In this document: piece after piece, positions 29,841 through 34,375 of the stretch
Layout of the letters: each line of letters opens with the position of its first letter
Numbering within the stretch: position 1 is the first letter of the stretch
NCBI GenBank assembly: GCA_028023455.1
Contig: JAQFVV010000005.1
Location: forward strand, 20,336,001 to 20,400,000
DNA from: Epiperipatus broadwayi
Lineage: Eukaryota; Animalia; Onychophora
Length of the DNA: 64,000 nucleotides
Direction: 5' to 3'
Notes under the pieces: model-generated
Database searches by the model: none
Told to the model about the DNA's origin: nothing
The model's input: only the letters and a program-made list of their open reading frames with translations
Translations under genes and position numbers: made by a program

Positions 29841-31167
29841 TTGAAAATCAGTAAAAGAGATACAGAATAACACAGCTAAAAAGAAAAAGAACCCAATACA
29901 CCAAAACCAGCAGGACACACATGACAGGGTCCATCAACATAATGTATATATAAAAAAAAATTAGACAAACTGAATTCAGGCAACTTTTGATGCCTTAAGA
30001 GTAGCAAAAACACAACTTAAAGAACACAAGAGAAAGCTCTTTCTCTCATATATCTGTGAACAAACTTATGCCCTACAGAACTGTTTAGACACAGGAACAG
30101 ACTTATGCTTACTGTGTAAGCTCAATCTTACTTATGTAATCATTGTTTTTTAATCAATAAAATATGCTTTGAAACATAAAGTAATAATGTTTATGAGTAA
30201 TTTCAATATCATCAATCGAGATTACATGAAATGAATTAGTTTTGTTATTTAAATTATTTAGTTGTCTGAGCCATTCTTCTCTCATTGGCCTCATCTCAAA
30301 GGTATATATAATAATTCTCCACAACTACTGACAAGTCATGCTCTAAACTGAGAGAAAGATCATATTGTTATTGGTAAAAATGTTGCTGTCAGAAGGTACT
30401 ATATCCATAATGTTCTTTCTAAGAAGGTAGAACTCCAAACCAGGTTTAGCAATTTGAATCTATCCAGAAAAAATAAATACTTATGAGTGAACATTAAGTG
30501 CGACCCTCTGAGGGATGATTTGATATTTGATGACAGGAAACATAACCAGGATACTTTATACAAGCAGTTGCATAAGGAGCAGAAGGTTTGTTCATCATCA
30601 TCATCAATATCCATTCTAGTCAAATTAAATGAGTTAAATGTAAACTTTAATTAATTTTGTTAAAATGATGATTTACATATTAATTTTTGTTTATATGCCA
30701 GAAGTTATGAAACATCAGTTGAGATGCCATCACCATCATCCATCATTTAAATTCCTGATATAATAGTGTTTGGTGCTATCCACAAATTTTAGGCATTATG
30801 AGGAGGGCTTTGTAACTAAATGACATGTGGGTATAAAACTCCCATTATAATAAAAAAAATTCAATTTTTACGCAGAAATTGTTTTGTTATGTAAAGAGAG
30901 GATAAAAACAAACCATATATATATATATAATGAAGAAATTAACAGATTAAAATTAAAGTACATAAATTATTGTTTTTTTAACTCATATTCTTCATAATTA
31001 ACATTTTCTATAGAAATGAACTTTTTACTACAGTGATATGCGGTAATTGTAGTTACAAAGATATTCTTAAAATATTTGAATTTTCAAGCCATTGATTCTG
31101 AATAAATAAAAGCAAAAAGTGATCATTTAATAAAAAATATTGTAAAATACAGAGCCTCCTACTAGAG

Positions 31168-31353
31168 CAGCAGTCCTCAACTTGTGGGTCGTGATCCCTT
31201 TAAGGGACAAACAACCCTTTCACAAAGGTCACCTAGACCATTGGGAAATACATATTTTCGATTCATAACAGTAGCAAAATTAAAGGTTGGGGGCACCACA
31301 ACATAAGGAACTGTATTAAAGGGTCACGGCATTAGGAAGGGTGAGAGCCACTG
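31168..31353. mobile_element. SPIN/URR1-like non-autonomous hAT (Charlie-group) MITE
   Basis: Perfect 8-bp TSD TACTAGAG (31160-31167, 31354-31361) and CAG...CTG termini. The body closely follows the URR1/SPIN consensus as I recall it (CTCAAC.TGTGGGTC, GATTCATAACAGTAGCAAAATTA, GGAACTGTATTAAAGGGTC, CATTAGGAAGG), with CpG-type changes and a central deletion. Confidence 0.9.
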
Positions 31354-31789
31354 TACTAGAGGAAGGCCAATTAGCCATATCTGAATATTAATGTATTGCC
31401 ATCTAGTGGTCAATGAATTTTTTACTCATTGCTTACATTGTGGTATCTGAAGTTTGAAGAAAGATAATGCTATTGTCAGTTAATGTAAGTTTGGGTAGTC
31501 AGAGAATATTAAATATTTATTATTGATTACAAAAATTACCTATACAAATATGACACATGGTTGGAGTTAAAAGCAATTATTACAATATAAAAAAGAAATT
31601 ATTAATTAAACTAATAAAACACTTTTTTAAATATAAAATTCCAACATTAAAAAGAATTAAATTAAAAATTAGCTTTAATAATTGTATGTTAAGTAAAACA
31701 CACACACAAATTATATAAAAACTAAAAAATATCACATTTTACTTTATTGTACAAATGATTTAGACAATTCAGAAGAATAAAAGTAATAA

Positions 31790-34375
31790 AAAAATCAGAG
31801 TTAGTAAAAGTGGAAAAGAAAGGAAAAAAGCATGCAGAGAATATAAGTGTTCTATTAAGAACAAAGAGAGTGAAAAAGATATTAATGCTAAATGGGAAAA
31901 GTACTTAGAAAAGAAGAAGTTAGCTAAAATAGATAATTATAAAGAGAGGAATTGAATAGGAAATTGTTGGAGGATATTAATAAAAGTGGAAAAAGATGGG
32001 AGTAAAAAATTTTGGAATTACATTAAAAGAAGAAATGTACAAGGGAAAGAGATAGTATTACTAGATGATGAGGGAATAGAGTGTAGCTCTAGAGAAGAAT
32101 TAGAGAGAATTTTGAATAAATATGTAATGGATATAGAAAAGATGTTAGATGTGAAGGACAAGGGGATAGAAAATATGAAAGCATATACTAATGGAAATAT
32201 TAGGTTTACAGAAAATGAACTGAATGAGGCAGGAATTAAATTGAAAATTGGAAAGGCAAGAGGTTTAGATGGATGGGCAGCAGAGATGGTAATGAATTTA
32301 GGGCATAGGGCAAAAGTAAAGCTATTATCATTGTTTAATAAGATGGCACAGAAGAGAGTTTTTCCGGATAGTTGGAGTAATACAAGAGTAAGATTATTAT
32401 TTAAAGAAAAGGGTAAGGATCATAGAAAGTTAAATAATTATGAACCGATAGCGGTAACATCAGTTTTATATAAAAAAATTTTATATATGGTGGCTGGAAA
32501 AGTTGCAAAATGGATGGAAGAGAATAGTGTAGTGGGGGAAATGCAAGGAGGTTTTAGGTCAGATAGGCATATAGGAGATAGTTTATTTGTAGTTACACAA
32601 CTTATGAATATGAGTTGGAAATCAGGTAGACAGTTACATATGAGTTTTATAGATATAGAGAAGGTATATGATAGAGTAAATAGAAATAGATTATGGGTAA
32701 GTTTAGAAAATTTGGAAATGGATGAAGCCTTAGTGGATATTATTAAGAGATTATAGAGAAGGTATATGATAGAGTAAATAGAAATAGATTATGGGTTAGT
32801 TTAGAAAATTTGGAAATGGATGAAGCCTTAGTGGATATTATTAAGAGATTATATGAAAATAATTATTATGCATATCAATTAGGGGATATAGAATCAGTTA
32901 AACTTAAAAATGGGGTGGGACTAAGGAAAGGATGCCCTATGTTACCTACTTTGTTTTTGTTGTATTTGAGTGAAGTGGAGAGAGCATTAGAAAGACTAGG
33001 AAGAAGGATAGAGATACTGTTAATAAATGGCAAGGGAATATATACTTAGTTGGAACTTTTTTTGCAGATGACCTCTTTTTGTGTGCAGAAAAAAAAGAAG
33101 ATATGGAAGTTATGCTGAGGACATGCACAAGGGTGGGTAAAAAGATGGGGATTAAATTTAGTGAAGAAAAATCGAATATAATGATGGTTAATACTGGGAA
33201 AAGAGAAGACGAAGAATTTTTATTGGGGGATATGAAGTTAAGTGTGGTGAATAGATATAGTTATTTGGGAATCATTTTAAGTAATCAGAAAAATTGCTTG
33301 GATGAATGGGAGAAAAAATTGATAAATGAAGCAAAGAAAAAAAAGGGATTGATAAAGAAATTAACATTATTTTCTTATAATAAATATGATGTAGTTAGAA
33401 TTGTATGGAAGGGAGTTGCAGTAGCAGGGTTAACATATGGCAATGGTGTGTTGTGTGTTAGTAAAGGGGTATTAGATTACTTAAAAAAAGTACAAAGGGA
33501 AGTAGGAAGACATGCATTAGATGCAGATGTCAGGGCAGCAAAGGAGGCAATTCAAGAAGAAATGAGATGGTCATGTTTTTATATGAGAGATGTAGAAAGC
33601 AAAATGAAAATTTTTGGTAGATTGCAGTTTAAGGATAATAAAAGAGTAGCCAAAATAGTATTTAATTGGGTTACGAGTAAAGGGCAAGCAACAAGATGGG
33701 GAGAAAGGTAATGTGGTATGCAGAAAATTTGGATAAAGAATTTATATCAGTATATTTGTGTTAGAAGGATTGTTGAGTGTTATAGTGATAAATAATAGGA
33801 TAGAAGAATAGATGCATTAATAAAGAATAGGAAGTTGGAGAGATGGAGAACTAGTATGGAGAGTAAAAAGAGTTTAAATATATATAGAAGTAAATGGAAC
33901 ATTGTGAGCGAGTTAATTTATGATAATAGTAAGAAAAGTAGTTTATTGTTTAAGGCTCAAATGAGATCTTTAGCAACAAGGGAATACATATGTAAATGGA
34001 AAAATATGGGTGATGTAGTCTGCAAGTTTTGTAAGGAAGGCATAGAAAATATTAGGCATCTGTTAATTCAATGTAAATGCTTGGAAGCAGAAAGGGTACA
34101 AATAATGAAATTTATGGAAGAATAAATATGAACAAAGTGATTATACAGAAAATGGGTTATTGGTTTTTATGCTGGGTTTGGGAAAAGATAAAGGGGGATT
34201 TATATATGAAGGCCTTGGAGTTGACAAAGATTATGTTGTGGAAATGGGATGGAGCAGATTATGGGAAAACAGAGTGGGAAATGGAAGGTAAAATGGTTAA
34301 CAGGTTTCTCTGGGTATAGTTGTTGAGCGATTCCTGGCTCCGTATAAGGGAAAGTCACAGTGCATCACATCACAT
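31790..34375 (+). pseudogene. 5'-truncated, decayed non-LTR retrotransposon ORF2 (RT + C-terminal zinc finger); clade not determined
   Basis: ORF pieces 31986-32756, 32810-33049, 33079-33711 and 33835-34125 carry QGGFR, FIDIEKVYDRV, GLRKGCP, FADD and CKFC..E...H.L..C. (CATCA)n-like tail near 34360; 98-bp internal tandem duplication. Confidence 0.9.

What the first reader, a model, noticed from the sequence alone, without database searches (positions are those of the whole stretch)
31168..31353. SPACE INVADER (SPIN/URR1)-like MITE in an apparently invertebrate genome: possible horizontal transfer
Seen: a 186-bp element with a perfect 8-bp TSD whose long nucleotide blocks match the rodent URR1/SPIN MITE as I remember it, mostly differing by CpG-type transitions and one deletion. 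Known: SPIN hAT transposons spread horizontally among tetrapods and were also reported in Rhodnius prolixus and Lymnaea stagnalis. Inference: if this host is outside the known set, this is a new transfer record. The host species cannot be determined from the window.
Basis: partly seen in the sequence, partly recalled or inferred. Interest (0 to 1): 0.75.

Follow-up and report, generated by a model that had tools for sequence, protein, structure and literature searches.

The report
SPIN jumping gene in a velvet worm
This 186-letter stretch is a dead, shortened copy of the "SPACE INVADERS" (SPIN) jumping gene, sitting in the genome of the Caribbean velvet worm Epiperipatus broadwayi; its full-length relatives there are about 93% identical to a copy in a bat, so the element must have crossed between very distant animals. 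I found no paper reporting it in velvet worms.

Summary

- **The element.** Window 31168-31353 is a 186-bp hAT MITE flanked by a perfect 8-bp duplication, TACTAGAG.
- **The host.** G000 matches the published Epiperipatus broadwayi assembly (Onychophora, Trinidad and Tobago): 18,588 scaffolds and 5.60 Gb.
- **The family in this genome.** It has on the order of 10^3 MITE copies. About 90 copies are 2.6-2.7 kb long and carry decayed hAT transposase frames. I saw no open frame longer than 348 aa.
- **Similarity to vertebrates.**
  - A 6-copy consensus of the long copies is 92.6% identical over 2,704 nt to one copy in the bat Cnephaeus nilssonii (94.4% outside CpG sites).
  - The non-coding 3' end is about 95% identical.
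  - The ends match the published SPIN terminal repeat CAGYGGTTCTCAACCT, and the target motif NTYTARAN fits the published NYYTARRN.
- **Interpretation.** Such identity between two phyla means horizontal transfer.

Direction, vector, date and presence in other velvet worms are untested. SPIN is already published from a bug (Rhodnius), and a SPIN-like hAT from a snail (Biomphalaria). I found no paper linking it to Onychophora. Five other first-reader notes in this scan flag the same family elsewhere in this genome; none showed a follow-up.

The parts
31160..31167 (.). Left copy of the 8-bp target-site duplication, TACTAGAG
   Evidence: family D4, 100% identical to 31354-31361. It fits the family target motif NTYTARAN.
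31168..31353 (+). 186-bp non-autonomous SPIN-family hAT element (MITE). It is a deletion derivative made of about 95 nt of the 5' end and about 90 nt of the 3' end of the full-length element.
   Evidence: at least 1,636 candidates, 87-90% identity; 93.6% identical to the 30-copy consensus; positions 6-95 are colinear with the 5' end of the bat full-length element, and 110-187 with the 3' end.
31168..31183 (+). 5' terminal inverted repeat, CAGCAGTCCTCAACTT. It differs at 3 positions from the published SPIN repeat CAGYGGTTCTCAACCT.
   Evidence: The published repeat is in the table of PMC3014272. In the 30 aligned copies, about 10 carry G at position 5 of the repeat, the CAGCGG state.
31338..31353 (+). 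3' terminal inverted repeat, GGGTGAGAGCCACTG-type end (reverse complement CAGTGGCTCTCACCC)
   Evidence: The family 3' end is ...GGAAGGTTGAGARCCACTG, the same as in the bat element and in the vertebrate-type MITE copies.
31354..31361 (.). Right copy of the 8-bp target-site duplication, TACTAGAG

Best explanation
The element is a dead miniature copy (MITE) of the SPIN (SPACE INVADERS) family of hAT cut-and-paste DNA transposons, in the nuclear genome of the velvet worm Epiperipatus broadwayi.

**How it works.**
- It encodes nothing. It kept only the two ends that a SPIN transposase recognises. These are the 16-bp terminal inverted repeats and, by inference, the subterminal GGGTC repeats.
- It was therefore moved in trans by transposase from full-length SPIN copies in the same genome. 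Each insertion duplicated 8 bp of an NTYTARAN target.

**History in this genome.**
- The family amplified to roughly a thousand or more MITEs and about 90 full-length-type copies.
- It then lost all intact transposase genes and decayed, with extra decay at CpG sites in this CpG-depleted genome.

**Origin.** The velvet-worm elements are about 93% identical in nucleotides to a bat copy over 2.7 kb, non-coding ends included. The family must therefore have passed horizontally, directly or through intermediates, between the velvet-worm lineage and vertebrates long after the two phyla split.

**Shown:** structure, copy family, host identity, and identity to the bat element.
**Inferred:** mobilisation in trans, horizontal transfer as the cause, and present inactivity.
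**Unknown:** direction, vector and date.
For: **Structure**
- Perfect 8-bp duplication and hAT-type ends.
- 21 of 30 copies have duplications matching at 7 of 8 or better. The target NTYTARAN fits the published NYYTARRN of an Anolis SPIN MITE.
- The terminal repeat matches the published SPIN_AC repeat CAGYGGTTCTCAACCT.

**Family size**
- 1,636, 1,559 and 1,084 first-look candidates with three different probes.
- 92 candidates for a 498-nt internal probe; all 40 scored are 89-93% identical apart from the probe's own locus.

**Full-length copies**
- Six fetched loci have the SPIN 5' end 2.57-2.72 kb upstream of the 3' end, with duplications around them.
- Their broken frames carry hAT-like transposase motifs as I recognise them; Pfam scans of these pieces found no hAT-related family.

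**Cross-phylum identity**
- The best of 1.84 billion proteins is KAK1346652.1 from Cnephaeus nilssonii (Vespertilionidae), 84-87% identical at the amino-acid level.
- The bat locus holds a full-length element with the same ends. The host consensus is 92.6% identical to it over 2,704 nt and 94.4% outside CpG sites. The 3' non-coding 300 nt are 94.5-94.9% identical.
- One vertebrate-type MITE copy matches velvet-worm copies at up to 91% over its whole 146 nt.

**Host identity**
- Assembly size and scaffold number match PMC9985152.

**Not contamination**
- The flanks are AT-rich single-copy velvet-worm DNA on a scaffold longer than 20 Mb.
- Host-specific deletion subfamilies exist.

**Decay**
- MITE copies are 91.5-95.7% identical to their consensus; long copies are 94.2-95.8%.
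- No open frame longer than 348 aa appears among the scored SPIN-like matches.
Against: - I could not compare with the curated SPIN consensus sequences (Repbase/Dfam). That the bat element is 'SPIN' rests on its published terminal repeat, its size (about 2.9 kb without an 847-bp insert, against 2,836 bp listed for SPIN_Og), and the published presence of SPIN in vespertilionid bats.
- The bat comparison uses one copy, and the host consensus uses only six.
- Pfam scans of the velvet-worm transposase pieces gave no hAT-related family at E <= 0.01.
- The six long copies lack a 65-nt 5' stretch that both the bat element and the MITE have. They are therefore not the MITE's direct parent.
- Related hAT elements at 72-78% nucleotide identity occur in other invertebrate-type genomes. 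The wider clade may therefore be old in invertebrates, and the velvet-worm lineage could be a donor, not a recipient.
- Copy counts are first-look candidate numbers, not true counts.
- The 30-copy MITE sample was chosen by similarity to the window copy, so its consensus leans toward that copy.
Confidence: 0.85

Rival explanations
1. The family and the transfer are the same, but in the opposite or an indirect direction. SPIN would be an old resident of onychophorans or other invertebrates that was exported to vertebrates. Alternatively, both received it from a third party such as a parasite or a virus.
For: - Related elements at 78% nucleotide identity occur in an unidentified contig without CpG depletion, and at 72% in the myxozoan parasite Thelohanellus kitauei.
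- The velvet worm holds about 90 transposase-bearing copies. For Rhodnius, the paper I could read lists only non-autonomous entries, SPIN_NA_12/13_RP.
- Mismatches between the host consensus and the bat copy are 19, 15 and 44 by codon position. Some divergence therefore arose while the transposase was under selection.
Against: - Nothing here gives polarity. There is no tree of SPIN lineages, no other onychophoran genome, and no dating.
- Three word scans of viral contigs gave only chance matches.
Confidence: 0.3
2. Vertical inheritance: an ancient hAT family kept since the common ancestor of bilaterians, with similarity due to conservation and not to transfer.
For: hAT transposons are ancient. 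This genome has thousands of hAT domains: 5,965 candidates for PF05699.
Against: - 92.6% nucleotide identity over 2.7 kb, with about 95% in the non-coding 3' end, cannot survive in unconstrained DNA between phyla that split before the Cambrian. That date is established knowledge, not tested here.
- Copies within each genome are themselves already 4-8% decayed.
- Other hAT families in the same genome are only about 40% identical in protein.
Confidence: 0.02
3. Artefact: vertebrate DNA contaminating the velvet-worm assembly, or a chance hAT-like look-alike.
For: None found.
Against: - The element sits with a clean duplication inside 29%-GC single-copy DNA on a scaffold longer than 20 Mb.
- Copies lie on very many large scaffolds.
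- The host has its own deletion subfamilies.
- The alignment to vertebrate copies covers the whole length, not only the terminal repeat.
Confidence: 0.01

Closest known systems
SPIN (SPACE INVADERS) hAT transposons of tetrapods, for example SPIN_Ml of vespertilionid bats, SPIN_Og and SPIN_AC
   Same: - The 16-bp terminal repeat is CAGYGGTTCTCAACCT and the target duplication is 8 bp of NYYTARRN type.
- Full length is about 2.7-2.9 kb.
- The alignment to a bat copy runs end to end at 92.6%.
- Short deletion derivatives far outnumber the full-length copies.
   Different: - The host is an onychophoran.
- The velvet-worm long copies lack 65-nt and 53-nt stretches near the 5' end that the bat copy has.
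- I found no intact transposase.
- I made no direct comparison with the curated consensus sequences.
URR1 / SPIN_NA MITEs of murine rodents
   Same: - They share the same ends.
- They share long blocks such as GATTCATAACAGTAGCAAAATTA and GGTCACCACAACATRAGGAACTGTATTAAAGGGTC.
- I checked this on real copies from vertebrate-like metagenome and read-assembly contigs.
   Different: - The 186-bp velvet-worm form lacks a 35-45-bp internal segment (CAGTTATGAAGTAGCAAC...AAAATAATTTTAT) and a few bases near GATATTTACATTAC. It is an independent deletion derivative, not URR1 itself.
- The velvet-worm full-length copies do carry that segment at their 3' end.
- I did not prove that the comparison contigs are rodent.
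SPIN in invertebrates: Rhodnius prolixus (SPIN_NA_12/13_RP) and the SPIN-like hAT of Biomphalaria glabrata (about 1,000 copies)
   Same: An invertebrate genome carries a SPIN-family element at a copy number of about 10^3, read as horizontal transfer.
   Different: - It is a different phylum.
- The paper I read lists only non-autonomous SPIN entries for Rhodnius.
- The Biomphalaria paper says no intact transposases were detected.
- Here about 90 decayed full-length copies are present.
- I made no sequence comparison with those elements.

Membership tests
hAT superfamily (DNA transposons) | 8-bp target-site duplication | tested here: met
   The window copy is a perfect 8 of 8. 21 of 30 MITE copies match at 7 of 8 or better. 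Duplications are visible around 6 of 6 full-length copies, at 6-8 of 8.
hAT superfamily (DNA transposons) | Short terminal inverted repeats with a YARNG terminal motif | tested here: met
   The ends are CAGCA/CAGCG...CACTG. The YARNG motif is quoted in PMC3014272.
hAT superfamily (DNA transposons) | The autonomous partner encodes a hAT transposase | tested here: inconclusive
   - The full-length copies carry broken frames with hAT-like motifs.
- One 204-aa piece is 84% identical to a bat protein whose precomputed Pfam hit is FAM200-GTF2IRD2-like.
- Related hits carry DUF4371 and FAM200-ZBED5 RNase-like.
- My own Pfam scan of five velvet-worm pieces gave only a weak Spin-doc zinc-finger hit.
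SPIN (SPACE INVADERS) family | Terminal repeat CAGYGGTTCTCAACCT and target motif NYYTARRN | tested here: met
   - The published values are in PMC3014272.
- The family consensus is CAGC[A/G]GTTCTCAACCT and the target is NTYTARAN.
- The window copy has 3 changes in the repeat.
- This feature alone is not specific: other Anolis hAT families share a similar repeat.
SPIN (SPACE INVADERS) family | High nucleotide identity along the whole element to vertebrate SPIN | tested here: met
   - The host 6-copy consensus is 92.6% identical to an element in a vespertilionid bat over 2,704 nt.
- The MITE consensus is 89% identical to vertebrate-type MITE copies.
- Caveat: that the bat element is SPIN is inferred from its ends, its size and the published hosts.
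SPIN (SPACE INVADERS) family | Match to the curated Repbase/Dfam consensus sequences (SPIN_Ml, SPIN_Og, SPIN_NA_*) | not testable with these tools
   No repeat library is available here. The primary SPIN papers are not in the held library.
SPIN (SPACE INVADERS) family | Patchy distribution: absent from close relatives of the host | not testable with these tools
   G000 has no relatives in the genome collection. No other onychophoran assembly could be searched.

The most novel reading that the evidence does not exclude
Velvet worms, or the invertebrates they live among and eat, were a reservoir or stepping stone in the spread of SPIN through Neotropical animals. The velvet-worm lineage, with its roughly 90 transposase-bearing copies, would be a donor-side host and not a dead-end recipient. 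This would give the SPIN story a terrestrial invertebrate predator that does not feed on blood, as a link alongside the blood-feeding bug and the snails.
Probability: 0.12. Interest if true: 0.75.

Novelty: new member of a known kind. Interest (0 to 1): 0.55.

Why it matters
SPIN is the textbook case of a DNA transposon that spread horizontally among tetrapods, with a blood-feeding bug and freshwater snails as possible go-betweens.

Finding it in a velvet worm has three consequences:
- It adds a third invertebrate phylum. This animal is a soil-dwelling predator with no obvious parasitic tie to vertebrates.
- It comes from the Neotropics, where several known SPIN hosts live (from the literature).
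- Decayed full-length copies are present as well as MITEs, so the autonomous element itself once lived in an invertebrate germ line.

This widens the set of routes to consider for cross-phylum transposon transfer. It also gives a concrete test: screen other onychophorans. The find is an extension of a known phenomenon, not a new one.

Tried and rejected
**Finding the autonomous copy**
- I first went through the hAT dimerisation domain PF05699 (5,965 candidates). None of the 30 best loci had SPIN ends.
- The long copies were found only later, by probing with a vertebrate-type 3' end.

**Identifying the host**
- I read COX1 pseudogene copies from memory as mollusc, then as arthropod. That was unreliable.
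- A word search with a 160-aa COX1 piece gave no hit above about 80%.
- The window's LINE ORF2 gave nothing at E <= 1e-30 and is not on record.

**Collection scans**
- Two words were scanned in viral contigs. The three contigs hit show only 15-22-nt chance matches in GC-rich or unrelated DNA.
- The prokaryote genome contigs gave no match.

**Naming the comparison contigs**
- Rfam scans gave only a weak mir-297-like hit. Their rodent origin stays unproven.

**Papers**
- Pace 2008, Gilbert 2010, Gilbert 2012 and Schaack 2010 are not held.
- No held paper prints the SPIN repeat as CAGCGGTTCTCAACC.

**Other limits**
Later copies came through the fetch from genomes.
- I considered subfamily structure at the four C[A/G] sites of the MITE. 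These sites vary independently and the sample is biased toward the window copy, so I read them as CpG decay. Indel markers do define three MITE subfamilies.

Full report
**1. The observation**

- Window 31168-31353 is a 186-bp element. It begins CAGCAGTCCTCAACTTG and ends GAGAGCCACTG.
- It is flanked by a perfect 8-bp direct repeat, TACTAGAG.
- It belongs to a repeat family. The 186-bp query has 1,636 first-look candidates in the same genome. All 40 scored matches are 87-90% identical apart from the query's own locus.
- In an alignment of 30 copies the homology stops exactly at the CAG...CTG ends.
- 21 of 30 copies keep flanking duplications matching at 7 of 8 or better, and the target motif is NTYTARAN.
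- The two flanks of the window copy are single-copy. The insertion therefore lies in unique, 29%-GC DNA on a scaffold longer than 20 Mb.

**2. The host**

- COX1 pseudogene copies read with TGA as tryptophan showed an animal genome rich in nuclear copies of mitochondrial DNA. My guesses at the phylum from memory were not reliable, and a protein word search gave no close hit.
- I checked this against Sato et al. 2023 (PMC9985152). The Epiperipatus broadwayi assembly has 18,588 scaffolds and 5,601,407,943 bp. G000 has 18,588 contigs and 5,601,407,764 bases.
- The specimens came from Trinidad and Tobago.
- That paper does not mention hAT, SPIN or transposon transfer.

**3. What the element is**

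*Published hallmarks.* Novick et al. (PMC3014272) give the SPIN_AC terminal repeat as CAGYGGTTCTCAACCT. They give the target motif of a SPIN MITE as NYYTARRN. The velvet-worm family matches both.

*Real vertebrate-type MITE copies.*
- A 21-nt word from the element found eight metagenome contigs.
- A profile of junk translations of the MITE found short open frames on further contigs.
- These contigs have 39-55% GC. Most are CpG-depleted (observed/expected down to 0.07), but three of the eight metagenome contigs are not (0.67-1.30). Most are therefore vertebrate-like. I could not prove the species.
- Their SPIN-type MITEs align with the velvet-worm MITE along its whole length.
- The 30-copy host consensus is 89% identical (162 of 182) to a rough majority of about ten such decayed copies. 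By my inspection of the alignment, about half the mismatches are CG against TG/CA.
- The host form lacks a 35-45-bp internal segment.
- The window is strongly CpG-depleted (observed/expected 0.28). This explains the CpG-type changes.

*Full-length copies in the same genome.*
- One vertebrate-type 3' fragment (L080:1-146) matched the genome over its full length at up to 91%.
- The matches turned out to be the 3' ends of much longer conserved elements.
- In six fetched loci the SPIN 5' end lies 2.57-2.72 kb upstream of the 3' end, with duplications around the whole unit.
- These copies carry broken frames with hAT-like transposase motifs.
- An internal 498-nt probe has 92 candidates. All 40 scored are 89-93% identical apart from the probe's own locus.
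- Among the scored SPIN-like protein matches, no open frame exceeds 348 aa. The family looks extinct.

*Comparison with a bat.*
- I searched a 204-aa piece against 1.84 billion representative proteins. The best hit was KAK1346652.1 of Cnephaeus nilssonii, a vespertilionid bat. BLASTP gives 84% identity, 167 of 198.
- The bat locus (GCA_030846915.1) contains a full-length element with the ends CAGTGGTTCTCAACCT...GAGAACCACTG and an 847-bp foreign insert.
- Individual velvet-worm copies are 88-90% identical to it.
- A majority consensus of the six copies was used only inside the script and not printed. It is 92.6% identical to the bat copy over 2,704 nt, and 94.4% outside CpG sites.
- Identity is as high in the non-coding 3' end (94.5-94.9%) as in the coding part (93-95%).
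- Mismatches by codon position are 19, 15 and 44. Part of the divergence therefore arose under selection on the transposase, and the rest is neutral decay.
- The bat sequence is a single decayed copy, so the founders were probably closer still. That is an inference.

**4. How the MITE relates to the long copies**

- MITE positions 1-95 are colinear with the 5' end of the bat element.
- They match only the first 66 nt of the velvet-worm long copies, which lack 65 nt there.
- The MITE therefore descends from a more complete, more bat-like SPIN than the long copies I sampled.
- Indels define three MITE subfamilies.
- MITE copies are 91.5-95.7% identical to their consensus, which is biased toward the window copy. 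The window copy is 93.6% identical.
- Long copies are 4.2-5.8% diverged from their consensus.
- No neutral rate is known for onychophorans, so I give no date.

**5. Mechanism**

- The MITE has no coding capacity. It retains the terminal repeats and several GGGTC/GACCC subterminal repeats, which I infer to be transposase-binding sites.
- It was mobilised in trans by the SPIN hAT transposase through cut-and-paste, creating 8-bp duplications.
- It is now immobile. Its 5' repeat has three changes, and no intact transposase was seen.

**6. Why horizontal transfer**

- Onychophora and Chordata separated before the Cambrian (established knowledge). Non-coding DNA at about 95% identity cannot be vertical.
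- Contamination is excluded by the insertion contexts, the spread over many large scaffolds, and the host-specific subfamilies.
- More distant relatives exist at 78% nucleotide identity in an unidentified contig without CpG depletion, and at 72% in the myxozoan Thelohanellus kitauei. The velvet-worm/bat pair stands well above that background.
- Direction and vector are open. Three word scans of viral contigs gave only chance hits.

**7. Novelty**

- SPIN transfer is well known. From papers I could read it is reported in tetrapods and Rhodnius. A SPIN-like hAT of about 1,000 copies is reported in Biomphalaria.
- Four searches found no paper linking SPIN to velvet worms. The key primary papers and Repbase/Dfam were out of reach.
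- I therefore file this as a new member of a known kind: a new host phylum, with full-length copies.
- Five other first-reader notes in this scan flag the same family elsewhere in this genome; none showed a follow-up.

Noticed in passing
window:25654-29840: A non-LTR retrotransposon with both frames open: ORF1 of 301 aa with a zinc knuckle, and ORF2 of 1,078 aa. A word search with ORF2 found nothing at E <= 1e-30, and the exact protein is not on record.
   Followed up: partly
window:31986-33711: Two reverse-transcriptase-like open frames (256 and 210 aa) of another retroelement lie 630 bp downstream of the MITE. The stretch 32001-34000 has a strong GC skew (+0.64).
   Followed up: no
G000, e.g. 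C6258:1887564-1888187, C12403:6722423-6723046 and about 30 more: A second hAT family, only about 41% identical in protein to the SPIN piece, has many copies with identical scores and open frames of 636 aa. It looks young and possibly still active.
   Followed up: no
G000, e.g. C73:5801812-5802048, C190:1581087-1581323 (PF05699 hits): A third hAT family has dozens of copies with identical domain scores and open frames of 846-850 aa. The genome has 5,965 first-look candidates for the hAT dimerisation domain.
   Followed up: no
G000, 97 matches, e.g. C2:8155834-8157171; contig C14644: There are very many nuclear copies of mitochondrial COX1, several nearly full length with only TGA codons interrupting them. 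The 30.8-kb contig C14644 mixes mitochondrial gene pieces with retroelement frames.
   Followed up: partly
window:1-64000: Strong CpG depletion (observed/expected 0.28, with an excess of TG/CA) at 29% GC. This suggests heavy germ-line cytosine methylation in this velvet worm.
   Followed up: no
L119 (Thelohanellus kitauei JWZT01000923.1) and L118 (ENA ERZ26859072 ctg12588): SPIN-related hAT elements occur at 72% nucleotide identity in a myxozoan fish parasite, and at 78% in an unidentified genome without CpG depletion. The latter has a matching first 30 nt of the terminal repeat.
   Followed up: partly
window:15721-15801: The only Rfam match in the window at gathering score is a tRNA (32.3 bits). 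It may be part of a tRNA-derived SINE.
   Followed up: no
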